This document shows positions 286-62,321 of a DNA stretch of 64,000 nt, in pieces. Within the stretch, counting starts at the first letter, position 1, and the number at the start of each line of letters is the position of its first letter. The notes beneath the pieces were generated by a model. It did not search any database. It had not been told where the DNA came from and saw nothing but the letters and a program-made list of their open reading frames with translations. A program made the translations under genes and the position numbers. The stretch is from positions 1 to 64,000 of the IMG/VR virus record IMGVR_UViG_3300031669_000001. The stretch is one strand, 5' to 3'.

Positions 286-780
286 TTAAAGGCCAGGTAA
301 ATCTGACGTGGGTAGGAGTCCATCTCCGTAGAGAGATTCTCCATGAACCCGCATCAGGGTTGAAAAAACGTGCTTGTTGTAAATGCTGTACTGCTCTGGA
401 AAGCTCAAATTGTAAATTAAAGCGATAAACTTTGAAACTGCTGCTGATCTGGAGATGCCTGCTTCACAGTGAACTAGTGCGTAGACGGTATCGTCTTGAT
501 GCTTCTTCAGAAACTTCAAAATCTTCACAGCGTCATCTTCATTGAAGAGACGATACTGCGTCGCTTGTGAAGCGTTCATGTGAGATGGATCTGCATCATC
601 AAACTCAAGACGAAGAACATCTTTCCATGAAGCATCATGAAGGACCGCAGGCGTACAGTGTGCTGAAAGGCTATCAGGAACCGCTGGAGTCGTGATCGAG
701 ATCAACACTCGGTCATCTCGTCCTGACGGCTCTACAAACCTTTCAGCAGATCTTTTTGAGAAGAAGTTTGTATTTTTCAT
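286..780 (-). CDS. Cys-dependent protein-tyrosine/dual-specificity-like phosphatase
   Basis: HCxAGxSRS active-site loop (VHCEAGISRSAA); first gene after an early promoter. Confidence 0.8.
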   Translation of the reverse strand: MKNTNFFSKRSAERFVEPSGRDDRVLISITTPAVPDSLSAHCTPAVLHDASWKDVLRLEFDDADPSHMNASQATQYRLFNEDDAVKILKFLKKHQDDTVYALVHCEAGISRSAAVSKFIALIYNLSFPEQYSIYNKHVFSTLMRVHGESLYGDGLLPTSDLPGL

Positions 781-897: not shown

Positions 898-1470
898 ATG
901 AAGCTTAAAGAATTCTTGCTCGAATCAACTATACAGTCAGCGACAACTCACATCAGAGATAATCTCTTCGAGAGTATCGTCGATTATCTTTCTCTAGTCA
1001 TCGCGCAAATTAACAACAAAAAGCCTGATGAACTCTTCAAACCAGGTCCAAACGCGCTCGATTTAGATCATCTCGCTACAATTCTTACGGGTCTCAAGAT
1101 CGTCGCAGATCCAGATTATCGTGCAGGTATCACAAAGCGAGATGTTGGTATGAATCCTAATGATGCAAAAGAACTCTTTAACGTTCTCAATCAAGTCGAC
1201 AAGCAAGGTAAAGATCCAGAAGCAATAAAGAACGTGTTCGTCGCTCTCTGTAAGTTAGCACCTCAAGCTCTCAAGCTTCAACGTTCTGAACTCGACATAC
1301 TCAGCGCTGGAGATGAAGCGGAGCGTAAACATGAAGCTCAATCTCTTCAACAGGTTCTTACAAAGGCAACTCAACTATTCAACAAAGTTCGTGTGTCAGC
1401 CACAAGCACTCGCGGCGTTGATGTACCATCCTTGGGTACTCCCGGTCACACATCCATTAGCACCAGCTAA
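898..1470 (+). CDS. Late protein, candidate internal head protein
   Basis: Late promoter and SD; N-terminus MKLKEFLLE-S resembles T4 capsid-targeting sequence. Confidence 0.65.
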   Translation: MKLKEFLLESTIQSATTHIRDNLFESIVDYLSLVIAQINNKKPDELFKPGPNALDLDHLATILTGLKIVADPDYRAGITKRDVGMNPNDAKELFNVLNQVDKQGKDPEAIKNVFVALCKLAPQALKLQRSELDILSAGDEAERKHEAQSLQQVLTKATQLFNKVRVSATSTRGVDVPSLGTPGHTSISTS

Positions 1471-2274
1471 CACTCCATTATCCGAATCATCAATCCTCAT
1501 CTTTTCACGAAGATGAGGATGTTTCAAAGCTATCAAGTGCCTTAATTCTTTATCTTCAGTCAGACCGGGATAATTTGCTTGCCGCAGGATCTGATCTTCA
1601 TCTCCCGATCTTATGAACATAATCATGGCGAGAACTTGATCTAGAACCGGTGTGCTTTCCATGATCACACAAAGCTTAGACACAAACAAGTTTTCTTTGG
1701 TGTACAGCTCAAGCTTATAAGGAGTACTGTAACCTGGGTATTGTGTTCTTTGAATGATAGATTGATCCTTCGTAAGCACAAACTTAAAGTCGCTTTCAGG
1801 GTGATAAACTTCTACTCCTGATCCTCCCAAGAAGCACCTAATCTCATCATTGAATCCTAAGCCCGTAATGAGCTTGAGACCTTTCTTTATGGCAGACCTT
1901 ATAGGTCTTGGATTCGGTCTCAATAACTTTCCAGCGACTTTTATGTTGTTAGCTTCAGCGTATAATCTCGCCTCATTCCAATTGTTCATCGTCCAAGTTG
2001 CACATGTTGTAGCCGTATCCCAGCCAGTGCCAGTCCAACTATGAATTGGAGAAGAACTTGTCAAGAATGAGAGGTAAATGTCATTCATGATGTCCTGTCC
2101 TGTCCTAGTAATAGACACAACATTGGTTGTTGAAGTTGCGATAACCCCATTGCTAATCGCTGATACGGTCCCCGACGGTCTAATGTTATTCACAAGGAAC
2201 ACAGTAGAATTAGTATCAATCACATTTGTAGGAACGTTGTGATTGTGAGTCGGAGATTCTGTTGGGGCTGCCAT
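1396..2274 (-). CDS. Hypothetical protein; partner of the GG-terminated protein
   Basis: 292 aa; TAATG overlap with upstream gene; low-complexity T/N/S N-terminus; C-terminal LCV...TP..DQ..A...AN segment. Confidence 0.7.
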   Translation of the reverse strand: MAAPTESPTHNHNVPTNVIDTNSTVFLVNNIRPSGTVSAISNGVIATSTTNVVSITRTGQDIMNDIYLSFLTSSSPIHSWTGTGWDTATTCATWTMNNWNEARLYAEANNIKVAGKLLRPNPRPIRSAIKKGLKLITGLGFNDEIRCFLGGSGVEVYHPESDFKFVLTKDQSIIQRTQYPGYSTPYKLELYTKENLFVSKLCVIMESTPVLDQVLAMIMFIRSGDEDQILRQANYPGLTEDKELRHLIALKHPHLREKMRIDDSDNGVLAGANGCVTGSTQGWYINAASACG

Positions 2275-2687
2275 TAGCCGCCGGCTATCTTACGAACTGC
2301 GACAGCCTTTGAGTTTGCAACCTTTGTCGGGTCACGCTCGATGACTGGATCAGCTTTTGATCCTTTGCCGAAGAGATTTGGACGGGCGAAACTTGCATTG
2401 CCGCTGCGAACCTGCTCTGCCACATCGCGATCATCAACAGACTTTACCATACGCTCGAATGCATCATCGTCGATGACAACATGTTCACACTTGTCGAGAG
2501 TCTCTTCCGTAACTTTAACCTTGCGGTAAAGCTTAACGATTGGAATCTTCTTTGTGGTGAAGAATGTGTAGCCTTCAGACATCTTCTTCTTGATCATCTC
2601 TATGATCTTGTCTTTGTTGTGTTCATCCCAGGTGATCGTGATGTCGCCTGAACCGTTCAGAAATGTGATGCTTGGTTGTTCGTTCAT
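2274..2687 (-). CDS. Hypothetical protein ending in di-glycine (possible ubiquitin-like)
   Basis: 137 aa, C-terminus AVAVRKIAGG-stop. Confidence 0.7.
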   Translation of the reverse strand: MNEQPSITFLNGSGDITITWDEHNKDKIIEMIKKKMSEGYTFFTTKKIPIVKLYRKVKVTEETLDKCEHVVIDDDAFERMVKSVDDRDVAEQVRSGNASFARPNLFGKGSKADPVIERDPTKVANSKAVAVRKIAGG

Positions 2688-4458: not shown

Positions 4459-5142
4459 TTAAACCTTTAACAGGTTTGGGATGACAGCTCTGCTCATCCA
4501 ATGTTCATCTGTTTGGACGTGTCCCTTGCGAACCCACTTTGCAACCTTCTTGTCAAAGTCGTCAAAGCGAATTTCATCGACTATGCGAACGACGAAACCC
4601 TCTTGCGTGTGTGGATCCAACTCATCAGCCAGATCGTAGAGCACTTGAAGATTAAAGACGCCTCTGTAAAATTCTTCAGGCTGAACGATGCCTAACCTGT
4701 CAAACCAATCCGTCTGAGCGTCGACGCTGAGAGCTACGTTGCGATCATCCCAAATGGAGAAGCCGTAGAAGTAGCTCTTCAAGTCGGTGTAGGGAATTGA
4801 GTGTTGCGCGTACATGTTCTCGCCGCAAATTCTCCAACCATCAGGGATCATGTAGCTCATGTTTCCATGAAAACGTTTGATCCAGTCTCGAGATGGGTGG
4901 TGACGAGAATCCAAGCTGCGCGCGTGGAAGCCGTGATGATAGAGAGTAGTGTTTTCTCCATCCATCTTTTCAGTGACGATGACTTCCTTGCCGATCAGGC
5001 CTACAAGGCTCTCGATCAGGCGGTCATCATTCTGCAGCCCAGGGCTGAATGGAAGATGCATCGTGCGTGGGTATTTGACTTTCATTGCAACTCCTTGTAG
5101 ACGCTGATAGGATATGAATTTGGTACTTCCTTGTACCCACAA
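4459..5142 (-). CDS. RNA ligase family nucleotidyltransferase (likely start 5085)
   Basis: KYPRTMHLPFSPG, motif I EKMDGEN, ICGEN, YGFSIWD, EGFVVR, AKWVR. Confidence 0.85.
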   Translation of the reverse strand: MWVQGSTKFISYQRLQGVAMKVKYPRTMHLPFSPGLQNDDRLIESLVGLIGKEVIVTEKMDGENTTLYHHGFHARSLDSRHHPSRDWIKRFHGNMSYMIPDGWRICGENMYAQHSIPYTDLKSYFYGFSIWDDRNVALSVDAQTDWFDRLGIVQPEEFYRGVFNLQVLYDLADELDPHTQEGFVVRIVDEIRFDDFDKKVAKWVRKGHVQTDEHWMSRAVIPNLLKV

Positions 5143-8235: not shown

Positions 8236-9111
8236 TCATATCTCGAACACCTTATGCTTTACAAAATGTTGTGATTCAAACTCTTGACTCTTGTAGCCGA
8301 CGCAGTTGTTTACCAACAACGTTTCACCCACCAAAGTTTCCTTCTGATAGTGAGTGTGACCGTAGCACCACATCTTGATGTGTGGATTGTCCAAGATCAA
8401 GTCGCTCAGGTCGCTGTGATAGTAACCGTTACCTGCAGTGTTTGTAGCAAACATTGGGTTGCTCAAGCCTGGCATAGGCAAGTGATGAGTGATCACCACT
8501 ATCTTCTTGTCTTTGTTCTGCTCAATGATGATCTTCAGGTAATCACGATGCTTCATGAAAGTTTGCACCCACTTCTCACTCGTGAACCGGCTCCAACCCA
8601 TTTGAGAGTAGCTGTTAGTTTTTAGATCCAAGCTTTTCAAACCTGTATCAAATGCTATCTTGCCATCGTAGCGCATGTAACCCGGCATGTTGTACATCGT
8701 CAACGGATCAAACTTGTTCATGTCAGTCCACAACGTGCAACCAACGAACAACACATCTTCGTCAATCACCACGTCGCAGTCAAGAACCTTGACGTTCATG
8801 ATTCCTAGGTCAGCCAGCATGTTGTTGCACTTCTGACCGCCCTTCACGATAGACAGATACTTTTCAGTAGGCCAGTAGTCATGGTTACCGAGAACAATTA
8901 ACACTCGCTTGAAGTGCTGCGCGACGTTGCTGATCCAGGAATCCTCTGCGTGCATGATGAAGTGAGTACCAATCCACAGATCGCCAGCAAGAATCAGAGT
9001 AGTCTCTGCATCGTCAGGCATCTTCGGCGGGTACCACATGACATCGCGTGCCTCGTAGTGGTCTAAGTGCATGTCGGAATAAACTCGAATCTTCTTCATA
9101 GGTCTGTTCAT
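8236..9111 (-). CDS. Calcineurin-like metallophosphoesterase
   Basis: SDMH, AGD, GNHDY, THH, GHTH motifs; ATGA overlap with PurA-like gene. Confidence 0.9.
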   Translation of the reverse strand: MNRPMKKIRVYSDMHLDHYEARDVMWYPPKMPDDAETTLILAGDLWIGTHFIMHAEDSWISNVAQHFKRVLIVLGNHDYWPTEKYLSIVKGGQKCNNMLADLGIMNVKVLDCDVVIDEDVLFVGCTLWTDMNKFDPLTMYNMPGYMRYDGKIAFDTGLKSLDLKTNSYSQMGWSRFTSEKWVQTFMKHRDYLKIIIEQNKDKKIVVITHHLPMPGLSNPMFATNTAGNGYYHSDLSDLILDNPHIKMWCYGHTHYQKETLVGETLLVNNCVGYKSQEFESQHFVKHKVFEI

Positions 9112-10367
9112 AAGGTAAATCTTTCCTTGATATTGTCTCTTGTAGGCCCACGGCTTTCCAACACGTAAGGTAATCCAATTTCACGAGCAAGTGAAACTGA
9201 GAAGTTATCCTTTGACGCACGCTTACGCTTTCCATTTGAAATGTAACGACCTACGTCGTCGAGATGATCAACGCAAGTAACGGCTAGCTTTGGGTTTACA
9301 TTGAAGCTAGAACCAAACACAGAATCTTTCAGATCAACAGCGATGCGATGACGTAGTTCATCGACATCCAAGTTACCATAACGGAACTTTCCTTGGAACT
9401 CATTTGTAAAGTTCGTAGTTTCCTTGATTCCTTTGTAAGGCTTTTCCTTCAACTCGTTTTCCATTGGACCAGCGCCGTGACGCGTCAAGTAGGCTCTAGT
9501 TACGTAGTAGACGTCGATCGCGTTGATTCCAGCTTCCTTGCAGATTTCTCTAACGTTTGTCAGACCGGTGAAGGACTTAGTTACGTGAGGGTGATGACCA
9601 TTCACTTGATCTAGACCGAGACCTTGACCGCCTTCAAATATCAACGAGTCATGCTTGCTCAAATTTTTTGTGTGCGTGATGGATATTGACTTTCCGAAGA
9701 GAATGATGTCTTCTAGGAACTTCCAGATCAAATTATCGTCCATCACCCGCTTCAGCATTTCATGAGTGTAGGGAATTCCGAGTTGTTGTAACCGCAGTGG
9801 AACCCACTCTTTGCGAATCAACTGTAATTTGTAGTGAAGCTCATCAGTTTTATCGTAGATTGAGTTGTAGTAAACGTCATCTGCATTCAGCTTGAAGATT
9901 GATTTCAGGTCAAATAGCTTGCCATCATTCGCAGACACCACTTCACAATTATTTCGATCGATGGTGTCTGTGACACCTAGACCGCAACTTCCATGTTTGA
10001 AATGTTTCTCGCGATACTCATTGACCATCATGTCGTATGGTGTAGACACCATCACTCTTGGATCAACGAACATCTTTGGAATCTTAACACCGGCGCTCTC
10101 AAGAACTGTGCGTTCTTTGAGGTAGATCATCGGGTTAGCGACGAAGTACTTGCTCAGGAATGTATCGGCACCATGAAACGTTCCCGATCCAAAGTGACTG
10201 AAGACGTGTCGATGACCGCCTGGTGTTACCACTGTGTGACCAGCCTGGGCACCACCATTGAATCGAACAACCAGCTTAGATTTTTCTCGATGTACAAGAT
10301 AGTCAGTGATGAGACCTTTACCCTCGTCACCATAGTTGGCGCCTATTACTACGTGTACGTTGCTCAT
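9108..10367 (-). CDS. purA: Divergent adenylosuccinate synthetase (PurA)-like ligase
   Basis: GANYGDEGKG, GGAQAGHT, EGGQG, TRHGAGP, SRGP; aspartate loop and TKLD motif diverged. Confidence 0.85.
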   Translation of the reverse strand: MSNVHVVIGANYGDEGKGLITDYLVHREKSKLVVRFNGGAQAGHTVVTPGGHRHVFSHFGSGTFHGADTFLSKYFVANPMIYLKERTVLESAGVKIPKMFVDPRVMVSTPYDMMVNEYREKHFKHGSCGLGVTDTIDRNNCEVVSANDGKLFDLKSIFKLNADDVYYNSIYDKTDELHYKLQLIRKEWVPLRLQQLGIPYTHEMLKRVMDDNLIWKFLEDIILFGKSISITHTKNLSKHDSLIFEGGQGLGLDQVNGHHPHVTKSFTGLTNVREICKEAGINAIDVYYVTRAYLTRHGAGPMENELKEKPYKGIKETTNFTNEFQGKFRYGNLDVDELRHRIAVDLKDSVFGSSFNVNPKLAVTCVDHLDDVGRYISNGKRKRASKDNFSVSLAREIGLPYVLESRGPTRDNIKERFTL

Positions 10368-15194: not shown

Positions 15195-16631
15195 CTATTT
15201 GTCATCCCTCAGGCAGGTAAAGAATGGGAAACGCAGAGCGTAGGTGTCAGAGTTTTCAGCCAGGGATAGTTCTTGACATTCGATAGTGCAGGTCTCGCCG
15301 ATAAACTTGTCTTGGTTGTTCCAAGCGTAGGTGCGGAAGAACTCATCGTTAGATACTCCGCTTGCCAGGATAGCTGCGATGTCGATCTTGTTGGCTTTTG
15401 CGAACTTCGCCAACCAAGCTTTGTAGTTCTTGTGGCTGACCTTGATGCCGCCGCAACGAGACTTGATCTTGTTACCATTTTCGTCCTTGCCTTCAACGAA
15501 GAAGCCACCGAGACGGCCTTCATTCTTGGTACCGGCGCGGCCTTCGAAGCAACCAACGATCTTGACGTCCACGTCGATGACAGGCTTCCACTTCGACCAA
15601 GTAGCTGTACGCTTCTTGTTGTTCCATTCATACTTGCCGCTGAGGTACTTGATGATCAGACCTTCATCTTGACCAGCGATACCGAGCTCAGTAACTTCGG
15701 CGTAGAATTCTTGGGCTTCTGCCAAGTTTTTCAAGATGCGATACTTTGACTTCACGATTGTGGTCAGGTTGAGCTTCTTGATTACCTTTTCAAGATCACC
15801 AGATCGTGCATATTGAGGCTTAGGGCAGCTTTGAGCTTCCCATTCAGTGAGAGTCATCGTGTCGAATACGTAGAAGCGCATTCCAGATTTGTCACCTTTG
15901 GAACCTTTTGCTTTCGCTGTAGCAGACATTCCACCATCAGCCAAAGCTTCACCATCGACGATGATAGGTTGACCAACTTCTTGTTCCATCTTGATGAGTT
16001 CATCATCGAACAAACCATTCCATTGATCTGCAGATTTGCCGGAGCGAGACAGGTACTCGACTTCACCGTTCTGAACCTTTGCAACCAAGCGCATACCGTC
16101 ATATTTGACTTCGCCCATGCACGGGAATTCCCAACGATATTTTGGGTAAACGATTTCACCCTTTGCGTTCTTACGATGCTCGATCTTTTCGCAGAGCATC
16201 AACTCGAAGCCAGGAATCTTCAACTGAGGGTAAACTTTTTCGAAGGTGTTGGTGTTACCACCGCACTTCAGGTCTTTCAGGAGGACACGTTCGAGGACGG
16301 AAGCAGTACGTTCATCGTACAGTCCGAGGACGGCAGTTACTGCATTCTTTGCAGCGTTGCCAGTCAGAACTCGATCATTAAGTTGGTCTAGGAGTTCGAA
16401 GAAGAGCTTGAAAGAACCATTGCGTCCATCCAAGTTGCCGAATGCCTGTGGTTGTTCCCACTTGCGAATACCAAAGACACGATAAGGATTTTCAGTTTCC
16501 AGCAACAGACGAACACCGTCTGCATCCAGGCCGGAAAGTGCTTCGAATTTTTCTTTCTTCGTTGAAATCTTTTCAGCTGTAAGAATTGCATCTGCGAAGG
16601 ACTTTGCCATTGATAATCTCCTGTTTTCCAA
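15195..16631 (-). CDS. ATP-dependent DNA ligase (likely start 16610)
   Basis: EVKYDGMR, SRSG, DGE, FDT, EGLIIK, KWKP, OB domain LRFP. Confidence 0.95.
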   Translation of the reverse strand: MENRRLSMAKSFADAILTAEKISTKKEKFEALSGLDADGVRLLLETENPYRVFGIRKWEQPQAFGNLDGRNGSFKLFFELLDQLNDRVLTGNAAKNAVTAVLGLYDERTASVLERVLLKDLKCGGNTNTFEKVYPQLKIPGFELMLCEKIEHRKNAKGEIVYPKYRWEFPCMGEVKYDGMRLVAKVQNGEVEYLSRSGKSADQWNGLFDDELIKMEQEVGQPIIVDGEALADGGMSATAKAKGSKGDKSGMRFYVFDTMTLTEWEAQSCPKPQYARSGDLEKVIKKLNLTTIVKSKYRILKNLAEAQEFYAEVTELGIAGQDEGLIIKYLSGKYEWNNKKRTATWSKWKPVIDVDVKIVGCFEGRAGTKNEGRLGGFFVEGKDENGNKIKSRCGGIKVSHKNYKAWLAKFAKANKIDIAAILASGVSNDEFFRTYAWNNQDKFIGETCTIECQELSLAENSDTYALRFPFFTCLRDDK

Positions 16632-23669: not shown

Positions 23670-24860
23670 TTACCCATAGTATCCGCGATTAATGTTTACG
23701 CTAAAGCAGTGATCTTTCGCCCATGCATCTACAAGGGTAAGCTCTTCTGCTGTTGCGGCACGGTTAGCGATCCCGCGCGCCTGGACTATCGAACCAGCCT
23801 CAGTTACTTCAATCGTCAACTTACGGTGAGTTCCACCATATTCATCCTCGTTAGAGAGCGACCAGATAGAAACAGAACCCTTGATACAGCGATCTTTGTA
23901 GCTTAATACGCAGTGTCGTTGGGAGTTACCTTCCTGTTGAAGGTCCTTAGCGGTCTTGATCTGCTTGAAGAACCAGCGCTGTACCTTTCCAGTCCTAAAC
24001 TTTCGATTGTAAGTCTGATCTGGAACATCCAAGCCGTCCCAAGTTGCATTACCGATGACCTTCATTCGGCGAAGATCGTAGTGCCAGTCTTTCATCTTCT
24101 TGGTCAGAGATTCAACGGTCTGCCCAGAACCTGCTAGGGTGAAGGTTGGATTTCCAACGTGCTTGTGATTCAAATAGTCGACGAGATCGTTGATCTGATC
24201 GATGGTGATGTTATTTTCGTGAGCGAAGAATCGCATCACGTACTTCCAAAATTCGGTAGGCTTCTTCTCTACGAGCTTAGAACGAGCGACTCTAAGAGCG
24301 CTTCCGTCCTTCGCGCCAACGCACTTGCAGATTGCGTAGATGAGAGCCTGAGGGATGGTAAGATCGTACTTACAGTTCAAGAAGGCGTGAGTCTCCTTCT
24401 TGGACAAAGCTTTGTCCTTGAAGTATTCTTTGTAGAGAGAGCCACCAGTAGCAATGCAGATGTACCACATCTCAAATTCATGGTATCGTTGACGCGTGCC
24501 AGGAGCACGACCATATCCAGGTTGAACTGTATCGCCGCTATATTCCCAGATGTAGTTCATGAAGCTGGGAACAGGATACTTCTGAAAAACATAGCGAACC
24601 AACTCAAGAGTTTGCTTAGCGCGATTAGCGCTCTTGGTCTTCATCACGAAGAGGTTCTCATCGCGAACGAAATACTCTCGATACTCTTCAAGACGATTCA
24701 GCAGCGGAGGGTTAGCTTTTGCAGCAGCTTCTTTCTTCTCTTTATTTTGCTTGGCGATGCGAGCGGAAGCTGCGGCTAGCGCAGCTTCCTCGATTTCCAA
24801 TTTGTTTGGTTTTGGTTTCTTGCTGCTCATTACTGTACGCAGACTCCTGGTGTACCACAC
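23670..24860 (-). CDS. PcfJ-like domain protein
   Basis: L..EG....HCV.SY...C..G...IWSL...TIEV....I.QARG..NR. Confidence 0.75.
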   Translation of the reverse strand: MWYTRSLRTVMSSKKPKPNKLEIEEAALAAASARIAKQNKEKKEAAAKANPPLLNRLEEYREYFVRDENLFVMKTKSANRAKQTLELVRYVFQKYPVPSFMNYIWEYSGDTVQPGYGRAPGTRQRYHEFEMWYICIATGGSLYKEYFKDKALSKKETHAFLNCKYDLTIPQALIYAICKCVGAKDGSALRVARSKLVEKKPTEFWKYVMRFFAHENNITIDQINDLVDYLNHKHVGNPTFTLAGSGQTVESLTKKMKDWHYDLRRMKVIGNATWDGLDVPDQTYNRKFRTGKVQRWFFKQIKTAKDLQQEGNSQRHCVLSYKDRCIKGSVSIWSLSNEDEYGGTHRKLTIEVTEAGSIVQARGIANRAATAEELTLVDAWAKDHCFSVNINRGYYG

Positions 24861-57536: not shown

Positions 57537-58823
57537 TTATTCGAAAGTGATCTGATCTATCTTGAAACTTTTAGATTTTGGTGAAATGTAGTGTGCAGAT
57601 GATTCTGTTGGTGTAAGCAACCAAACCCACTTTGTTGGAGCTTTAGGATTTACTGAGTCACCATAGCCATCTGTGATCACGACGACGCAGTCAGGGTAAC
57701 GACCTTGATCTTTCTGAAGCCTCAAGCATTCTTCCTCAATGATTCGAAAGCTCGTGCCGCCGCCGATTCTAACGTGATCTCCAGGTTTTACAGGCGTAAC
57801 GACCGTGTCGAAGATGTAGAGCCTAGTGTCAAATATCCTGCGTTCCTCATCGAACGCCAGAAAGACCTTCTGAAAAATTTCAATGTAAGGTAAGCAAGAT
57901 CCAGAGATGTCCATGAACACGGCTGTTAGGAGACGATCTCTTACAGGTCTTTCAACGGCATTTATGCCTGGAAGAGATGCTTTGCTGCTCCTAATCACGT
58001 CATCGAAGCGGCGACTGTCGTGAGTGAACGTCTCTACATCCTTCTCAACCTGCTTCATGCTTGTCTTTTTAAGCTTGCGAATGATGTGAGAAAAATTGAC
58101 CTTCAACTTCTTGATCTTCTCCGCGATGATGTGTTCAAGCACTCCGGCAACCTTGCCGGCCAACAGACCGCCTGAAGCGCTGAAGAATGGAGGCAAGCTC
58201 TTGATTATCTTTTCAATATCAGCGACATCCAAATCTTCAGCTAAGGTGGCGGCCATCTCTGCTCGAGCGTGCTTCTCGACTTCTGTCATCGTTCCATCAT
58301 CATGAACGTCCAAAGTAGATGGGCCTCCAGCGCCTGAACTCTTAGGTGGTTTCTTGATCAGCTCCTCGAGGTAGTAGGTGAAAGTTTCATTTCTCTTGAT
58401 GAGGATAGGGTTCTCAAAGCAAGTATCGATCCAGCAGTACTTCTTCCAATCTCTAAGGTCTTCACGATCGTAGTGGAAGAGGTCGACTATCATCTCATTG
58501 ATCGTGATGTCCTGAGCGATGTTGACTAACTCTGCAGTAGCGCCTGGAACGTTCATGCCGTCGCGGATGCCGTGATCGAGGATGACGTGCATGCACTCGT
58601 GACAAACTACAAACAACTTCTCCCTGAAGGTCAGCTTATCCCAAAATTCTTGGTTGAGCTTCATCTCCGCTTTACCTTTGCGAGGTAGCCAGACGGCAGC
58701 CGTTGGAACGCTGTCATCAAATACCACGTCAGAGAGCTCAAAGAAGGTGAAGAAGACCTTGTTATAGTCCTCTATCGAAGCTGCGATTTCCAGCTTATCC
58801 TCTGATGACATTGAACGTCTCAT
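57537..58823 (-). CDS. Metallopeptidase-like plus vWA protein (DUF2201-type)
   Basis: HECMH zinc motif, N.AQD..IN, MIDAS DISGSC, GGGT, ITDG. Confidence 0.85.
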   Translation of the reverse strand: MRRSMSSEDKLEIAASIEDYNKVFFTFFELSDVVFDDSVPTAAVWLPRKGKAEMKLNQEFWDKLTFREKLFVVCHECMHVILDHGIRDGMNVPGATAELVNIAQDITINEMIVDLFHYDREDLRDWKKYCWIDTCFENPILIKRNETFTYYLEELIKKPPKSSGAGGPSTLDVHDDGTMTEVEKHARAEMAATLAEDLDVADIEKIIKSLPPFFSASGGLLAGKVAGVLEHIIAEKIKKLKVNFSHIIRKLKKTSMKQVEKDVETFTHDSRRFDDVIRSSKASLPGINAVERPVRDRLLTAVFMDISGSCLPYIEIFQKVFLAFDEERRIFDTRLYIFDTVVTPVKPGDHVRIGGGTSFRIIEEECLRLQKDQGRYPDCVVVITDGYGDSVNPKAPTKWVWLLTPTESSAHYISPKSKSFKIDQITFE

Positions 58824-59023
58824 GAATCAGGCCCACAATCAATTCGCCAGGGACACACTATCAAGCACGCAGTTGAGCAGTCATCTTCTCCGTGACAAGG
58901 CGGAGCTTTATCACCACGAAGTGATTTGATCTCCTCCAATAGCTTGAGTCTCTCAGGAGAGTTGTGAGCTCCTGTATTGCTCAAGAATGCCTCTTCGTCC
59001 AACAGGTCTTGTAAAATGCTCAT
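58820..59023 (-). CDS. Small Cys-rich protein
   Basis: C...C..C.W..C tail; between AAA and vWA genes. Confidence 0.55.
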   Translation of the reverse strand: MSILQDLLDEEAFLSNTGAHNSPERLKLLEEIKSLRGDKAPPCHGEDDCSTACLIVCPWRIDCGPDS

Positions 59024-60318
59024 AGAAAGTTCATGTCATCTACGATCTTGCGACTGTAGAGCTTCTCGTTGATGTAGTTCTTTTCTTTAGGTGTAAAGAA
59101 TCCGCCCACCTTAGCGATGATCTTGACGATCTCGTGGAAGTTTGTTTCTTTGCGAGCATCTTTTCCACCTATACCCCAGAAGATCCTGATCAAAGTCTTT
59201 TCCTGACAATTGAAAAGTACGTCTACACATCTATTTGCCAGCTTTGCTACGAGGTTGTGCTTTGTCGCGCTCAAGCCTCTGATGTCGTTTTCAAGTGAAC
59301 CACCATTCTTGTATAGCAGGTCAAGTCTAACGTTGTTTATGAGAGCTGCGGTACCTTGATTCCCCTTATCGTCTGGAAGTTTATTGATCAAATCTTCCAG
59401 AGAATTTACAACTTCAAAACCCTTCTGCCTAGCGTACACAAACTCAGTGAACGGTTCTACAAGCTCCTTAGGCATTTGCCTTCCATGCTTCTTGAAGAAG
59501 TCCACAGCTACTGGGTCGTTAGCTTTTACAAGGTCAAGCAGCTTCGTAGCGTTGTTTATGTCTGCGACGAACGCTCCCGCTTCCGCGTCATTCGTGACCT
59601 TCTTGATCTGCTCGTGGAACGGTAAGCTCTTCAGCATGCTTCGAAGAGCTGAGACATTTGATTCGGTAGGTAGGAAGTCCTCCAAGCGGCAACCATTTGC
59701 GTACGCTGCCGCTGCGTAGTCAACTCGGCGAGGAGACACCATTCTTTGAATGTCACCAGGCAAATCCTTCCACCATTGAATGAAGATCATCCCGGTGGTC
59801 GGGAATTTTGCGTTGAAGTAGTCCTCGTCTATCTTGTATGGAACTTTGATTGTAACCTGGAAGCGATCAAGTTGTGCGGGATCGATGTGATTGACTGAGT
59901 AGGTGTCGTCATCATCTTCTGGATTGATAGCTGCCCAGATAACTTTCAGATTGTTGAGCTTGTGTCCGTTGATTGACTTGAACTGAATCAGCTCCATGAC
60001 GGCGTTAATCACCTTGTCAGGTGCGCGGTTAAACTCGTCGAGCATGATCGCTTCTATCTCGTCGTTCTCACACCAAGCAGGCCTCACCAACTCAAGAGTT
60101 CGCTTGTTTACACCATCATCGATGACCTTAGGTACCCCTACAAAGTCAACCCAAGGATCGAGGGTACTTGCTGAGAAGTACTTCCAGCGATCGCCGTAAA
60201 GCTCAGTGAAAACTTCCTTAATGACGGTAGTCTTGCCGACACCGTGGAGCCCACTCAGGAGAACGTTATAGTTTAGGATAGCGTACTGTGTCAGCCTAGC
60301 TTTGTTGATGATTGCCAT
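59020..60318 (-). CDS. MoxR-like AAA+ ATPase
   Basis: GLHGVGKT, LDEFNRA, AAINP, DPAQLDRF, SPRR. Confidence 0.9.
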   Translation of the reverse strand: MAIINKARLTQYAILNYNVLLSGLHGVGKTTVIKEVFTELYGDRWKYFSASTLDPWVDFVGVPKVIDDGVNKRTLELVRPAWCENDEIEAIMLDEFNRAPDKVINAVMELIQFKSINGHKLNNLKVIWAAINPEDDDDTYSVNHIDPAQLDRFQVTIKVPYKIDEDYFNAKFPTTGMIFIQWWKDLPGDIQRMVSPRRVDYAAAAYANGCRLEDFLPTESNVSALRSMLKSLPFHEQIKKVTNDAEAGAFVADINNATKLLDLVKANDPVAVDFFKKHGRQMPKELVEPFTEFVYARQKGFEVVNSLEDLINKLPDDKGNQGTAALINNVRLDLLYKNGGSLENDIRGLSATKHNLVAKLANRCVDVLFNCQEKTLIRIFWGIGGKDARKETNFHEIVKIIAKVGGFFTPKEKNYINEKLYSRKIVDDMNFL

Positions 60319-60425: not shown

Positions 60426-61025
60426 TTAAGCGTAGTTAGGATTGGTGATAGTTGTACCAACCGTTGCAGCCGTAATCTTGAATCCAGATCCGTTTGTTGC
60501 AGGATATGAACTTCCAGAAACACCGATGTAAGCAGACAAAACGTCACCGGCTGTGTAGTCTTCACCACCTGTGAGAAGAGTCACAGAAGTAACAGCTCCA
60601 CCAGAAGCAGTTATCTTTGCACGAGCTCCCTTACCAGTTCCGCCAGTAAGTTGAACAACGAAGTCAGTCAGATTAGGGTAACCTGTACCACCAACCAACG
60701 AGCCAAGAGTTAGAATCTCTGGACGAGGACCAGCAGGAACGAAACTTCCAGCTTCAACGGCTGCTACGATAGCATTAAAAGCTGCAACAACGTGAGCATT
60801 GACACTTAATGTTCCTGGAGCTGCACTAGACGCAGCTGGATAATCAGTTATAACAGCAAATGAATCGCTTGCTGGACCTACATTGCTACCTACTCTGATG
60901 GTAGTTGTAGCTGCAGTAGCTGCAGTAGAATCTGTATAACTGTCGACGGTGATACCATCGAAAACGATAACGTCAGCGCTATCAGTGTGAACGTTGACTG
61001 TGTATTTTGTACCTGTACCTGCCAT
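60426..61025 (-). CDS. Late structural protein (Gly/Thr/Ala-rich)
   Basis: Late promoter; GGTG.GA.A.I...GG.VTSV.....G..Y repeat typical of virion proteins. Confidence 0.7.
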   Translation of the reverse strand: MAGTGTKYTVNVHTDSADVIVFDGITVDSYTDSTAATAATTTIRVGSNVGPASDSFAVITDYPAASSAAPGTLSVNAHVVAAFNAIVAAVEAGSFVPAGPRPEILTLGSLVGGTGYPNLTDFVVQLTGGTGKGARAKITASGGAVTSVTLLTGGEDYTAGDVLSAYIGVSGSSYPATNGSGFKITAATVGTTITNPNYA

Positions 61026-61080
61026 GATGAACTCCTCTTAAATTCGTTGACGAAATGTGCGTCGATGATTGTTATGCAGT

Positions 61081-61088
61081 TATTTATA
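61081..61088 (-). promoter_or_regulatory. T4-like late promoter
   Basis: Exact TATAAATA. Confidence 0.75.
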
Positions 61089-61099
61089 GCGATATATGA

Positions 61100-61125
61100 A
61101 AAAAGACAGCCGAAGCTGTCTTTTT
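61100..61125. terminator. Intrinsic terminator
   Basis: AAAAAGACAGC-TTCG loop (minus)-GCTGTCTTTTT. Confidence 0.85.
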
Positions 61126-61153
61126 CGTTTTGTTACTCGGTCTAAGTTGAAAC

Positions 61154-61651
61154 TTAGATTGTTGCGCCTGTAGGACCAGTAGGAGCGTAAGGTAATGTTG
61201 GACCTGTAACTCCATTTACAACGTGCTGGAAATAACCGCCACCACCAACTGCGTAAGGACCCTGTGGAGTAGCGTTGGTATCAGCAATTACGAGATTGAT
61301 AGCTGTAACAGCATCTGCAACAAGCGTTGCAAAAGTTGTAGTCATTGCTGGAATTACTGCTTGTCCATATTCCAGGAAAACATCATAAGCGATGAATTCT
61401 TGATCTAAACTATATTGTGGTTCAACTTTAACACTACAAACGATAGCTAAATCGCCAGCTGCGGAATTTCCTGGACCGCCTCCTGTATTGATGTTAATTG
61501 GAGCAAGATATCCACTAGAAGAAAGTGGAATATCTGCTGAAGTGTTGAAAGCTGGGCTATATGTGAACTTTTCTGTCTTGATAGAATCAAGTTCAAGAGT
61601 GTTCGCTGCATCTGTGACCATGCGAATTGTTACTTTTTGACCTGTTGCCAT
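61154..61651 (-). CDS. Late structural protein
   Basis: Late-like box; N-terminus paralogous to 60426..61025; GPTGPTG tail. Confidence 0.65.
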   Translation of the reverse strand: MATGQKVTIRMVTDAANTLELDSIKTEKFTYSPAFNTSADIPLSSSGYLAPININTGGGPGNSAAGDLAIVCSVKVEPQYSLDQEFIAYDVFLEYGQAVIPAMTTTFATLVADAVTAINLVIADTNATPQGPYAVGGGGYFQHVVNGVTGPTLPYAPTGPTGATI

Positions 61652-61688
61652 TTTAATGCTCCTCTAGAGAATAAATGTTAGTTGTTTT

Positions 61689-61730
61689 AGCGTTCCGGAA
61701 CGCTTGTATTGTTATACGGAAGTATTTATG
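61689..61730 (-). promoter_or_regulatory. Late-like box CATAAATA plus 16-nt palindrome in the leader
   Basis: CATAAATA at 61723-61730; AGCGTTCCGGAACGCT at 61689-61704. Confidence 0.55.
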
Positions 61731-61757
61731 TCTATGCTTAAAAAGTCAATGATTTTT

Positions 61758-62321
61758 TTACGCCATTGCTAAGCCAAACGCTGAATTTGCAGCTGCCAAC
61801 GCCAGACCTCTAAAATATTCTACGGTTTGAGTCGTATCTGGTCCGGCGCCTGTAAGATATAAGATTTCCACGATGAAATCCTGCGATGGAAATGGTGAGC
61901 CTGGAGTCTCTGGAGCACCGGTCATTGAAGCTGGACTGTAAAGCGCGACATAGTTGAACCCTGTCTGTCCAGCAGCCGGAAGTGGCTGAGCCATACGAGT
62001 GATTCCTGCTACGGTAGCAGTTCCTGTACCCGAGCCTACAACGTGAGGATACATTCCATAAGGAGGATAATCACCAGGGGGGTTAGCTCTTGCTACGAAT
62101 GTAACACCGACTGTATTAGAAGCTGCACCGATCAAAGTAAAGTCTGTAGTGCCGACAGTCGCTATAGTGTACGCAACGCCTACTACAAATTGGCCCGCAA
62201 CAACAGGGGCATCATCGTAGCTCCATTGCTTGTCTGCTGACATGTTATCCAGCGTAAAAGTTACAAAGCGCGGATCAGCGTGTCCGTAGATAGTTAAAAT
62301 TTTTCCTACTTGGGTTGTCAT
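61758..62321 (-). CDS. Late structural protein
   Basis: GATAAATA at 62350-62357; FVVGVAYTIATVGTTDFTLIGAASNTVGVTF virion-type repeat. Confidence 0.7.
   Translation of the reverse strand: MTTQVGKILTIYGHADPRFVTFTLDNMSADKQWSYDDAPVVAGQFVVGVAYTIATVGTTDFTLIGAASNTVGVTFVARANPPGDYPPYGMYPHVVGSGTGTATVAGITRMAQPLPAAGQTGFNYVALYSPASMTGAPETPGSPFPSQDFIVEILYLTGAGPDTTQTVEYFRGLALAAANSAFGLAMA

What the first reader, a model, noticed from the sequence alone, without database searches (positions are those of the whole stretch)
1396..2687. Coupled pair: di-glycine-terminated protein plus Cys-containing partner (possible phage ubiquitin-like system)
Seen: the 137-aa ORF ends AVAVRKIAGG-stop, like MoaD/ThiS/Ubl tails, and its TAA overlaps the ATG of a 292-aa gene. 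The partner's C-terminal domain has an isolated Cys in LCVIMESTPVLDQVLA...EDQILRQAN, behind a low-complexity arm. I recall similar small GG-ending plus 'LC..P..D..LA...AN' pairs in other phages, but cannot verify this. No E1 was recognised in the window. Inference: a minimal conjugation or thioester system, possibly using host E1-like enzymes or decoying bacterial ubiquitin-like defences. Candidate deconjugases (C39-like, S24-like) lie elsewhere in the window.
Basis: partly seen in the sequence, partly recalled or inferred. Interest (0 to 1): 0.7.

Follow-up and report, generated by a model that had tools for sequence, protein, structure and literature searches.

The report
Phage Gly-Gly protein with cysteine partner
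A soil jumbo phage carries a widespread, unannotated two-gene module: a small protein that always ends in Gly-Gly, and a partner with one invariant cysteine and lysine-free arms; it looks like a stripped-down ubiquitin-type tagging pair with no activating enzyme of its own, but neither protein could be shown to have the ubiquitin or E2 fold.

Summary
On the minus strand, a 137-aa ORF (2274-2687) ends ...AVAVRKIAGG-stop. Its TAA shares one base with the ATG of a 292-aa ORF (1396-2274).

- **Gly-Gly end.** The small protein belongs to a family of at least 224 proteins. Of 124 sequences inspected, 123 end exactly in Gly-Gly and one in Ala-Gly. The Gly codons vary synonymously.
- **Partner.** Its family has 670 representatives at 50% identity. 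Cys202, Asp212 and Asn234 are invariant in an alpha/beta sandwich domain.
- **Lysine-free arms.** The N-terminal arms evolve fast and hold 2 Lys in 2,665 residues, against 9.2% Lys in the core.
- **Linkage.** The two genes are the only ones shared by all 10 loci clustered, and the same adjacent pair occurs in an eleventh, the cultured phage. The loci include jumbo phages (among them the cultured Sinorhizobium phage Phosso) and mobile elements of Achromobacter, Burkholderia and Agitococcus.
- **No accessory enzymes.** No ThiF-type E1 was found in this 345-kb phage or in Phosso, and no JAB protease in this phage.
- **Fold evidence is weak.** No beta-grasp match was found for the small protein. 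For the partner, frataxin/CyaY scores at least as well as E2 enzymes.

Best reading (about 0.35): a minimal ubiquitin-like carrier plus E2-like thioester protein that depends on an unlinked, probably host, activating enzyme. It is unannotated and experimentally tractable.

The parts
2274..2687 (-). Gene for the 137-aa Lys-rich protein with an invariant free C-terminal Gly-Gly (P0001). Predicted element order is beta-beta-alpha-beta, three helices, then a last strand (residues 129-133) followed by the tail IAGG.
   Evidence: family alignments; 123 of 124 members end in GG; AF2 model.
2277..2282 (-). The two terminal Gly codons (GGC GGC), followed directly by TAA at 2274-2276.
   Evidence: Synonymous codon variation in homologous loci (GGT GGT, GGG GGC, GGA GGT) shows that selection acts on the protein, not on the DNA or a ribosome-binding site.
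2272..2276 (-). TAATG stop/start overlap that couples the two genes.
   Evidence: Gaps in other loci range from a 1-nt overlap (Phosso) to 45 nt; in L008 two small ORFs lie between the genes.
1396..2274 (-). Gene for the 292-aa partner protein (P0002).
   Evidence: homologues.
1918..2274 (-). Hypervariable N-terminal arm (residues 1-119). It is Thr/Ser/Asn/Gly/Ile-rich and has no Lys in its first 110 residues (Lys111 and Lys115 lie at the border with the core).
   Evidence: AF2 pLDDT is below 50. In 24 homologues the arms hold 2 Lys in 2,665 residues, against 2.1% Arg and 9.2% Lys in the core. Arm identity is 24-73% where core identity is 71-94%.
1489..1917 (-). Conserved alpha/beta sandwich domain (residues 120-262): N-terminal helix, five-stranded antiparallel sheet, Cys-containing loop, C-terminal helices.
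   Evidence: AF2 pLDDT is mostly 70-93, with dips to about 52 and 67. Alignments. Structural matches: frataxin/CyaY Z 5.6-6.0, bacterial E2 chain 8tyz_C Z 5.0, other E2s Z 3.7-4.1.
1669..1671 (-). Codon TGT for the invariant Cys202, at the end of the last sheet strand. It is followed by the conserved motif xxxx(T/S)PxLDQ and later SGxExxxLxxAN.
   Evidence: C202, P209, D212 and N234 are invariant in 40 diverse members.
1399..1488 (-). Variable, Lys-free C-terminal tail (residues 263-292); the stop codon lies at 1396-1398.
   Evidence: The tail is conserved in the closest homologue P0030, so it is coding even though the convergent ORF 898-1470 overlaps it.

Best explanation
The two genes form a self-contained module that works like a minimal ubiquitin-type relay.

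The small protein is made in its mature form, with a free C-terminal Gly-Gly carboxylate on a flexible tail after its last beta-strand (tail consensus [VL]-A-[VI]-[RK]-[PRK]-[IVL]-x-G-G). That carboxylate is activated by an enzyme the module does not encode. The most likely candidate is a host ThiF/MoeB-type or Cap2-type adenylating enzyme. The activated protein is then passed as a thioester to the invariant Cys202 of the partner.

The partner's fast-evolving, lysine-free arms (short class) or helical N-terminal domain (long class) would choose the target and escape self-modification. The carrier then ends up on a lysine of a host or competitor protein.

Shown here: the sequence conservation, the gene linkage, the lysine desert and the absence of an E1. 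Inferred: activation, the thioester, transfer and the target.
For: 1. The terminal GG is kept in 123 of 124 family members with nothing after it, and the Gly codons vary synonymously.
2. The last strand plus a four-residue tail ending in GG is the arrangement seen in ubiquitin, ThiS and MoaD. MoaD tails fetched here read VAFFPPVTGG against the family's VAVRPIAGG.
3. The partner's invariant residues are Cys, Asp and Asn, with no invariant His. This fits an E2-type aminolysis site better than a Cys protease (the E2 comparison is from general knowledge).
4. The Cys sits right after the last sheet strand, before a loop and a helix. The local motif LC[VY]xxxxxxLDQ resembles the catalytic LCYLxxxxxxLD(Q) of Cap2 E2 domains, and hhalign lines up Cys on Cys over a colinear 111 columns.
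5. Eight E2 or E2-like chains, including a bacterial E2 (8tyz_C, Z 5.0, rank 4 of 48,161), appear among the top 50 structural matches.
6. The arms are a lysine-specific desert (K 0.1%, R 2.1%, core K 9.2%). This is a known hallmark of ubiquitin-system components that avoid self-tagging (PMC10169902, PMC10665810).
7. Only these two genes are shared by all 10 loci clustered, usually with overlapping or closely spaced stop and start, and the same adjacent pair occurs in phage Phosso.
8. The genomes of the two bacteria that carry the module hold several ThiF-family proteins, and Achromobacter anxifer also has a Cap2-type E2-E1 fusion.
Against: - No E1, JAB or other accessory gene is linked, and no ThiF-family gene exists in two complete jumbo phages that carry the module.
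- The small protein's model (pLDDT 63) finds no beta-grasp protein in PDB Foldseek, the VIA-align wide search or the ESM Atlas.
- The partner's best structural matches are frataxin/CyaY, and no E2 appears in the top 30 Swiss-Prot models. All Z scores are below the noise mark.
- Pfam, PHROGs and PADLOC give nothing credible: no Pfam or PHROG family for the partner, none for the small protein below E 0.06, and only a weak AbiN match to it (PADLOC, E 0.0012, 16.7 bits).
- hhalign against Cap2 E2 (P 0.11) and against ThiS/MoaD (P 0.21, tail only) is not significant.
- There is no HPN motif next to the Cys.
- Thr/Ser-rich, Lys-poor composition also marks this phage's tail proteins, so composition alone is not proof.
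Confidence: 0.35

Rival explanations
1. Decoy or poison of host ubiquitin-like defence enzymes. The GG tail mimics the C-terminus that Cap2 (type II CBASS) or Bil-type E1/E2 enzymes activate. The phage protein would soak up or jam the host enzyme, and the partner would help to dock or trap it. No productive conjugation by the phage pair itself would be needed.
For: The module sits among early or accessory genes of phages and in mobile elements. No E1 is encoded, so any contact with an E1 must be with a host enzyme. Achromobacter anxifer carries both the module and a Cap2-type E2-E1 fusion. Hypervariable arms suit an arms race.
Against: A decoy would not need an obligatory partner with an invariant Cys/Asp/Asn site. 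The module is also kept inside bacterial genomes, where it would poison the host's own defence. No similarity to CD-NTase or BilA C-terminal domains was found, and PADLOC gave only a weak AbiN match to the small protein.
Confidence: 0.15
2. Sulfur-carrier or Urm1-like pair, or a tight non-covalent complex of the MoaD-MoaE type. The GG tail would be thiocarboxylated by host MoeB/ThiF plus a sulfurtransferase, and would deliver sulfur to, or react through, the partner's Cys. Alternatively, the tail would simply plug into the partner's active site.
For: The GG tail resembles MoaD tails. The partner's best structural matches are frataxin/CyaY, proteins of the sulfur/Fe-S relay. MoaD/MoaE-type gene pairs are also coupled, two-gene and E1-less within the operon (general knowledge). 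Urm1 conjugation needs no E2 or E3 and runs through a target Cys (PMC9574740).
Against: No homology to MoaE, ThiG, TusA, rhodanese or any PP-loop enzyme was found. No downstream sulfur-using enzyme is linked in any locus. The lysine-specific desert is unexplained by pure sulfur transfer. Frataxin has no equivalent Cys.
Confidence: 0.15
3. No acyl chemistry at all. The partner would be a structural or virion-associated protein with a fibre-like variable arm and a conserved anchoring domain, and the small protein would be its chaperone or adaptor. The GG end and the Cys would be conserved for packing or binding.
For: The arm's composition (Thr/Ser-rich, few charges) resembles this phage's tail fibre and sheath proteins. 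In Phosso the pair lies beside the small terminase and major capsid genes. No fold or family evidence for enzymatic function exists.
Against: Near-absolute conservation of a terminal Gly-Gly with nothing after it is hard to explain by packing. The module also occurs beside DNA polymerase and primase genes in bacterial mobile elements. The long class replaces the arm with a helical domain. The arms avoid Lys but not Arg, unlike the tail proteins, which lack both.
Confidence: 0.25

Closest known systems
Bacterial Bil (BilA Ubl / BilB E2 / BilC DUB / BilD E1) and type II CBASS Cap2 systems
   Same: A small protein or domain with a C-terminal Gly is passed to a catalytic Cys on an E2-like alpha/beta domain. 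The local Cys motif resembles Cap2 E2 (LCYLxxxxxxLD). The BilB-type E2 chain 8tyz_C is among the best structural matches (Z 5.0). Both belong to phage-host conflict.
   Different: There is no E1 and no deubiquitinase. The module is encoded by phages and mobile elements rather than by the defending cell. No detectable sequence homology exists, no beta-grasp fold is shown, and the partner carries lysine-free variable arms.
ThiS/MoaD sulfur carriers with their partner enzymes (MoaD-MoaE, ThiS-ThiG)
   Same: A small protein is encoded in mature form and ends in x-G-G after its last strand. It is translationally coupled to a partner gene, and the activating E1-like enzyme is encoded elsewhere.
   Different: The small protein is 137 aa instead of 65-80. 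It has no Pfam ThiS match, and hhalign aligns only the tail (P 0.21). The partner is unrelated to MoaE or ThiG and has an invariant Cys. No cofactor pathway genes are linked.
Eukaryotic E2 (UBC) enzymes and E2-like Atg10/Atg3
   Same: The secondary-structure order is alpha, beta-meander, Cys loop, helices. The conserved residue set is Cys plus Asp/Asn, without His. Several E2s appear at Z 3.7-4.1.
   Different: There is no HPN motif next to the Cys, the sheet has five strands rather than four, frataxin matches better, and there is no statistical support.
Frataxin/CyaY fold
   Same: These are the best structural matches (Z 5.6-6.0; Foldseek probability 0.57-0.69): an N-terminal helix, an antiparallel sheet and a C-terminal helix.
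   Different: There is no sequence similarity, frataxin has no equivalent catalytic Cys or TPxLDQ/SGxE...AN motifs, and it has no GG-ended partner.
Lysine deserts of ubiquitin-proteasome and pupylation components (PMC10169902, PMC10665810)
   Same: Long, conserved, disordered stretches without Lys lie next to a conjugation-related domain.
   Different: These deserts were described in eukaryotes and Actinobacteria. Here they occur in a phage/proteobacterial protein whose link to conjugation is not yet shown.

Membership tests
Ubiquitin-like / beta-grasp modifiers and sulfur carriers (Ub, ThiS, MoaD, SAMP, BilA) | Exposed C-terminal Gly-Gly (or Gly) used for activation | tested here: met
   123 of 124 members end in GG directly before the stop, and the Gly codons vary synonymously. 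Chemical use of the end was not tested.
Ubiquitin-like / beta-grasp modifiers and sulfur carriers (Ub, ThiS, MoaD, SAMP, BilA) | Beta-grasp fold | tested here: inconclusive
   The AF2 model has pLDDT 63. The order of elements (b-b-a-b ... b-tail) is compatible, but no beta-grasp protein appears among Foldseek PDB, VIA-align wide or Atlas matches.
Ubiquitin-like / beta-grasp modifiers and sulfur carriers (Ub, ThiS, MoaD, SAMP, BilA) | Sequence or profile similarity to a known Ubl family | tested here: not met
   No Pfam hit in 25 members. A PDB profile search found nothing. hhalign against 26 ThiS/MoaD sequences aligned the tail only, P 0.21.
Ubiquitin-like / beta-grasp modifiers and sulfur carriers (Ub, ThiS, MoaD, SAMP, BilA) | Cognate ThiF-family E1 in the operon or genome | tested here: not met
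   No ThiF match in the 345-kb phage or in the 469-kb phage Phosso, and none next to the pair in any locus. Host genomes do carry ThiF-family genes elsewhere.
Ubiquitin-like / beta-grasp modifiers and sulfur carriers (Ub, ThiS, MoaD, SAMP, BilA) | Formation of covalent conjugates or a thiocarboxylate | not testable with these tools
   This needs biochemistry.
E2 / UBC-like conjugating enzymes (including Cap2 and BilB E2) | UBC-type alpha/beta fold | tested here: inconclusive
   8tyz_C scores Z 5.0, and Atg10, UBE2O, UBE2G2 and others Z 3.7-4.1. Frataxin scores Z 5.6-6.0, and no E2 is in the Swiss-Prot top 30. All are below the noise mark.
E2 / UBC-like conjugating enzymes (including Cap2 and BilB E2) | Invariant catalytic Cys in the loop after the sheet | tested here: met
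   C202 is invariant in 40 diverse members and sits at the end of strand 197-202, before loop 203-212 and helix 213-223. Catalysis itself was not tested.
E2 / UBC-like conjugating enzymes (including Cap2 and BilB E2) | HPN motif a few residues before the Cys | tested here: not met
   The only HP motif (HP[DE]S, residues 158-161) lies 44 residues upstream and is lost in many long-class members.
E2 / UBC-like conjugating enzymes (including Cap2 and BilB E2) | Sequence or profile similarity | tested here: not met
   No Pfam hit. hhalign against four Cap2 E2 domains gave probability 0.5% and P 0.11, although the alignment is colinear and Cys-on-Cys.
MoaD-MoaE / ThiS-ThiG type carrier-enzyme pairs | Partner homologous to MoaE, ThiG or another sulfur-accepting enzyme | tested here: not met
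   No Pfam family on the partner or on 40 relatives.
Double-glycine leader peptides cut by C39 peptidases | GG followed by a core peptide, with a linked C39 peptidase or ABC transporter | tested here: not met
   The stop codon follows GG in every member. The only C39-like match in the genome is sub-threshold, 36 kb away and has no counterpart near the pair in any other locus.
Frataxin/CyaY | Sequence family membership (Pfam Frataxin_Cyay) | tested here: not met
   No Pfam hit. The resemblance is fold-level only.

The most novel reading that the evidence does not exclude
Phages and mobile elements of Proteobacteria encode their own ubiquitin-like tagging system, reduced to a carrier and an E2-like ligase. 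The system hijacks a host E1-type adenylating enzyme (MoeB, ThiF or Cap2) to tag host or rival proteins. The ligase's hypervariable, lysine-free arms would act as built-in, rapidly evolving substrate receptors. This would be the first virus-encoded protein-conjugation system in bacteria and the first that parasitises the host's sulfur-carrier or defence E1.
Probability: 0.2. Interest if true: 0.9.

Novelty: new variant of a known kind. Interest (0 to 1): 0.68.

Why it matters
Ubiquitin-like conjugation in bacteria is currently known as a host defence (Bil, type II CBASS, Bub) or as sulfur transfer. A virus-side module with the two most diagnostic sequence hallmarks, a free terminal Gly-Gly and a single invariant Cys, but no E1, would open two questions. 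First, do phages tag host proteins? Second, can host E1-like enzymes be hijacked?

Both protein families are large (hundreds of members) and entirely unannotated. The module occurs in a cultured phage (Sinorhizobium phage Phosso, genes 346 and 345) and in cultured bacteria (Achromobacter anxifer LMG 26857, Burkholderia ubonensis). The hypothesis can therefore be tested directly with simple mutants.

Even if the ubiquitin-like reading is wrong, an invariant Gly-Gly end and a lysine-specific desert still call for a chemical explanation.

Tried and rejected
- **Family libraries.** Pfam and PHROGs on both proteins, PADLOC on the two plus four relatives, and Pfam on 25 and 40 further relatives gave no credible family; the only match near threshold is AbiN to the small protein (PADLOC, E 0.0012, 16.7 bits).
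- **GenBank phages.** tblastn with the window proteins found nothing. A distant member found only phage Phosso.
- **PDB profile searches.** Only a spurious match to designed repeat proteins appeared.
- **ESM Atlas feature search.** No usable hit.
- **Complex prediction.** The partner core plus the GG protein gave no verdict (score 0.00, partner pLDDT about 50). This is not evidence either way.
- **R2K ATP-grasp as the missing activator.** One lies next to the pair in Burkholderia ubonensis, one lies at 287 kb in this phage and three are in Phosso. The family is absent from the Achromobacter and Agitococcus genomes that carry the pair, and it is not linked in the other loci. Rejected.
- **GG as a by-product of a ribosome-binding site for the downstream gene.** Rejected, because the Gly codons vary and the spacing ranges from a 1-nt overlap to 45 nt.
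- **Read-through or fusion of the two ORFs as a double-glycine leader.** No fused homologue was seen among the relatives examined (224 GG-family hits, 124 of them inspected).
- **C39-like and S24-like 'deconjugases'.** Both are sub-threshold, and no gene beyond the pair is conserved across the loci.
- **Long-class N-terminal domain as a hidden E1.** It is helical, weakly conserved and shows no nucleotide-binding motif.
- **Promoter and terminator scan.** Nothing above the shuffled background.
- **First scan of genome contigs.** It found nothing because its patterns were specific to the short class.
Full report
**1. What is in the sequence**

The window is the first 64 kb of a 345,069-bp virus record with direct terminal repeats, a jumbo phage from a soil metagenome. 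Almost all its genes lie on the minus strand.

At the reported coordinates there are two minus-strand ORFs:
- ORF 2274-2687 encodes 137 aa (P0001) and ends ...AVAVRKIAGG.
- ORF 1396-2274 encodes 292 aa (P0002).
- The stop TAA and the start ATG share base 2274.

The pair closes a tightly packed run of small genes that also contains an RNA ligase. It meets a convergent ORF (898-1470) and, beyond that, a dual-specificity phosphatase gene. No sigma-70-type promoter or intrinsic terminator stands out.

**2. The small protein**

A word-based search found 28 relatives. A profile search with distant members found 224. None carries a meaningful name or Pfam domain.

- Of the 124 sequences in hand, 123 end exactly in Gly-Gly and one in Ala-Gly. 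The stop codon always follows directly.
- The tail consensus is [VL]-A-[VI]-[RK]-[PRK]-[IVL]-x-G-G.
- The Gly codons differ between loci (GGC GGC, GGT GGT, GGG GGC, GGA GGT). The distance to the next gene ranges from a 1-nt overlap to 45 nt. The conservation is therefore at the protein level and is not a ribosome-binding site.
- Other invariant residues are G14, D15, W20, K35, M36, G39, F42, F43 and D86.
- The protein is Lys-rich, at 10.4%.

AlphaFold2 gave a modest model (pLDDT 63). Its elements run strand 7-10, strand 16-19, helix 22-37, strand 40-44, three helices, strand 129-133, and then the four-residue tail. This order and spacing are compatible with a beta-grasp carrying a helical insert. 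No search recovered a ubiquitin-like protein:
- Foldseek against PDB gave nothing below E = 2.
- The VIA-align wide search gave Z of at most 3.7, all generic two-layer sandwiches.
- The Atlas returned small unnamed proteins.
- hhalign against 26 ThiS/MoaD proteins fetched from Betaproteobacteria aligned only the tail, with P = 0.21.

**3. The partner**

P0002 has 25 close relatives. An exhaustive profile search with its conserved domain found 670 representatives at 50% identity, 127 of them below 1e-30.

There are two architectures:
- A short class of 230-330 aa, with a variable N-terminal arm.
- A long class of 400-550 aa, with a weakly conserved helical N-terminal domain of about 200 residues.

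Across 40 diverse members, mostly 17-29% identical to P0002, the invariant columns are C202, P209, D212 and N234. G151, P185, V203, T208, L211, Q213, G224, E226 and L230 are nearly invariant. No His is invariant.

AF2 models the domain (residues 120-262) with pLDDT mostly 70-93. It consists of a helix, five antiparallel strands, a loop that starts right after Cys202, and then helices.

Structural searches gave the following:
- Frataxin/CyaY scored best, with Z 5.6-6.0 and Foldseek probability up to 0.69.
- A bacterial E2 from an E1-E2-Ubl complex (8tyz_C) scored Z 5.0, rank 4 of 48,161 chains.
- Atg10, UBE2O, UBE2G2, UbcH10, E2S and Pex4 scored Z 3.7-4.0.
- RWD-like Mediator and kinetochore domains also appeared.
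- All of these lie below the tool's noise mark of about 7-8.

Four Cap2 E2 domains were fetched from Betaproteobacteria. Their catalytic motif is LCYLxxxxxxLD(Q), and the family reads LC[VY]xxx[TS]PxLDQ. hhalign aligns the two domains colinearly, Cys on Cys, but without significance (probability 0.5%, P 0.11).

**4. A lysine-specific desert**

The N-terminal arms of 24 short-class partners total 2,665 residues.
- They contain two lysines (0.1%), and 23 of the 24 arms have none.
- Arg is 2.1%, Asp plus Glu 5.3% and Thr 18.8%.
- The adjoining cores have 9.2% Lys.

The arms diverge much faster than the cores, for example 35% against 89% identity for P0002 and P0030. Their composition is conserved while their sequence is not. 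In the long class the flanks are also Lys-poor (K 2.3%, R 7.2%) compared with the core (K 7.3%, R 5.6%).

Such deserts are described for ubiquitin-system and pupylation-exposed proteins, which avoid adventitious tagging (PMC10169902, PMC10665810).

One caveat applies. This phage's tail proteins (sheath, collagen-like fibres and others) are also Lys-poor and Thr/Ser-rich. They lack Arg as well, however, whereas the arms avoid Lys specifically.

**5. Linkage and distribution**

The GG gene and the partner gene lie together in every locus examined:
- Four metagenomic phage contigs (L002, L005, L008, L012).
- Two contigs with bacterial-looking neighbours (L004, L007).
- An Agitococcus MAG (L009).
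- Achromobacter anxifer LMG 26857 (L010).
- Burkholderia ubonensis (L011).
- The cultured 469-kb Sinorhizobium phage Phosso, genes 346 and 345 (L017).

In L008, two small ORFs separate the pair.

Clustering all ORFs of ten loci (the window and the nine metagenomic and bacterial loci above) shows that these two genes are the only ones shared by all. Neighbours vary: DHFR and DHH in T4-like contigs; DNA polymerase A, Toprim primase and NUDIX in the Burkholderiales elements; small terminase and major capsid in Phosso.

No ThiF-family E1 and no Prok-JAB are encoded by the 345-kb phage, and Phosso also has no ThiF. The bacterial carriers have the usual ThiF-family genes elsewhere, and A. anxifer also has a Cap2-type E2-E1 fusion.

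**6. Interpretation**

Four features together are most simply read as acyl-transfer chemistry on the C-terminal carboxylate of the small protein, with the partner's Cys as acceptor:
- The encoded, never-extended Gly-Gly end.
- The coupled partner with one invariant Cys plus Asp and Asn, and no His.
- The position of that Cys after the last sheet strand.
- The lysine-specific desert.

This would be a ubiquitin-type relay reduced to two parts. Because a free carboxylate cannot react with a thiol without activation, an unlinked, probably host, adenylating enzyme has to be assumed. That is the weakest link.

Membership in the Ubl or E2 families is not shown. The fold tests are inconclusive and the sequence tests negative.

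I put about 0.35 on the relay. The rest is spread over three rivals:
- A decoy of host E1/E2 defence enzymes (0.15).
- A sulfur-carrier or Urm1-like or MoaD-MoaE-like pair, favoured somewhat by the frataxin-like fold (0.15).
- A non-catalytic structural protein with its chaperone (0.25).

The complex prediction gave no verdict.

**7. Novelty and value**

Literature searches for phage-encoded ubiquitin-like systems returned only host defence systems (Bil, type II CBASS, Bub) and general Ubl work. None described this module.

Both families are unannotated, large and present in cultured organisms. The finding is therefore a real, conserved and unexplained module. Simple GG and Cys mutants in a host with defined E1 genes would decide it.

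Noticed in passing
G000 (whole phage, outside the window): 113575-115770, 162448-166674, 168912-171578, 253634-256360, 295067-299299, 299301-300185, 302364-304442; in the window 60426-62321 (-): Nineteen of 251 ORFs of at least 150 aa have under 3% Lys, against a proteome median of 7.7%. The seven with the longest Lys-free runs were annotated. Five are tail or virion proteins: tail sheath (K 1.2%, with a 328-aa Lys-free run), two collagen-like tail fibres (K 0.7%), an FN3 minor tail protein and a virion structural protein. The sixth has a Gly-rich domain and the seventh has no match. They are also Arg-poor and Thr/Ser-rich. This could be ordinary fibre composition, or avoidance of lysine-directed tagging such as Bil-type defence.
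   Followed up: partly
window 57537-58823 (-) and 59020-60318 (-); L005 3106-6166: A MoxR-type AAA ATPase and a DUF2201/VWA (CoxE-like) protein form a pair in the window. A similar pair (AAA ATPase plus DUF2201/VWA, both weak precomputed Pfam hits) lies 2-5 kb upstream of the GG/Cys module in the metagenomic phage contig L005. This suggests a related phage lineage rather than a functional link.
   Followed up: no
window 286-780 (-), 4459-5142 (-), 9108-10367 (-), 15195-16631 (-), 23670-24860 (-): Recognisable genes near the finding are a dual-specificity phosphatase-like protein (HCxxGxxRS motif, below the Pfam cut-off), an RNA ligase (PF09414), adenylosuccinate synthetase, an ATP-dependent DNA ligase and a PcfJ-like protein.
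   Followed up: partly
No gene beyond the GG/Cys pair was shared across the ten loci clustered.
   Followed up: yes
window 898-1470 (+): A convergent 190-aa ORF overlaps the last 75 nt of the partner gene. The partner's tail is conserved in its closest homologue, so that overlap is coding on the minus strand. Whether the plus-strand ORF is real was not checked.
   Followed up: no
G000:C1:287131-287634 (-); L011 8550-9332; phage Phosso 18690-19064, 35093-35608 and 169065-169490: R2K-clade ATP-grasp genes occur in both jumbo phages, and one lies two genes from the module in Burkholderia ubonensis. They are absent from the two other bacterial carriers, so they are not a required partner.
   Followed up: yes
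G001 (Achromobacter anxifer) C1:504768-506168 (L022/L028): The bacterial genome that carries the module on one contig also encodes a Cap2-type E2-E1 fusion (Prok-E2_B plus ThiF, open frame 618 aa, called ORF 542 aa). This is a possible activator or target of the GG protein.
   Followed up: no
P0010 (metagenomic homologue of the GG protein); L008 1848-2371: One GG-family member carries a DUF2934-like insert of about 40 aa in the linker before the tail. In L008 two small ORFs (49 and 126 aa) are inserted between the GG gene and the partner gene.
   Followed up: no
L004 3260-5807 and L009 9941-12621: Two loci share an additional gene pair near the module: a PP2C-type phosphatase and a protein of about 580 aa with no known domain. 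It is not found in the other loci.
   Followed up: no
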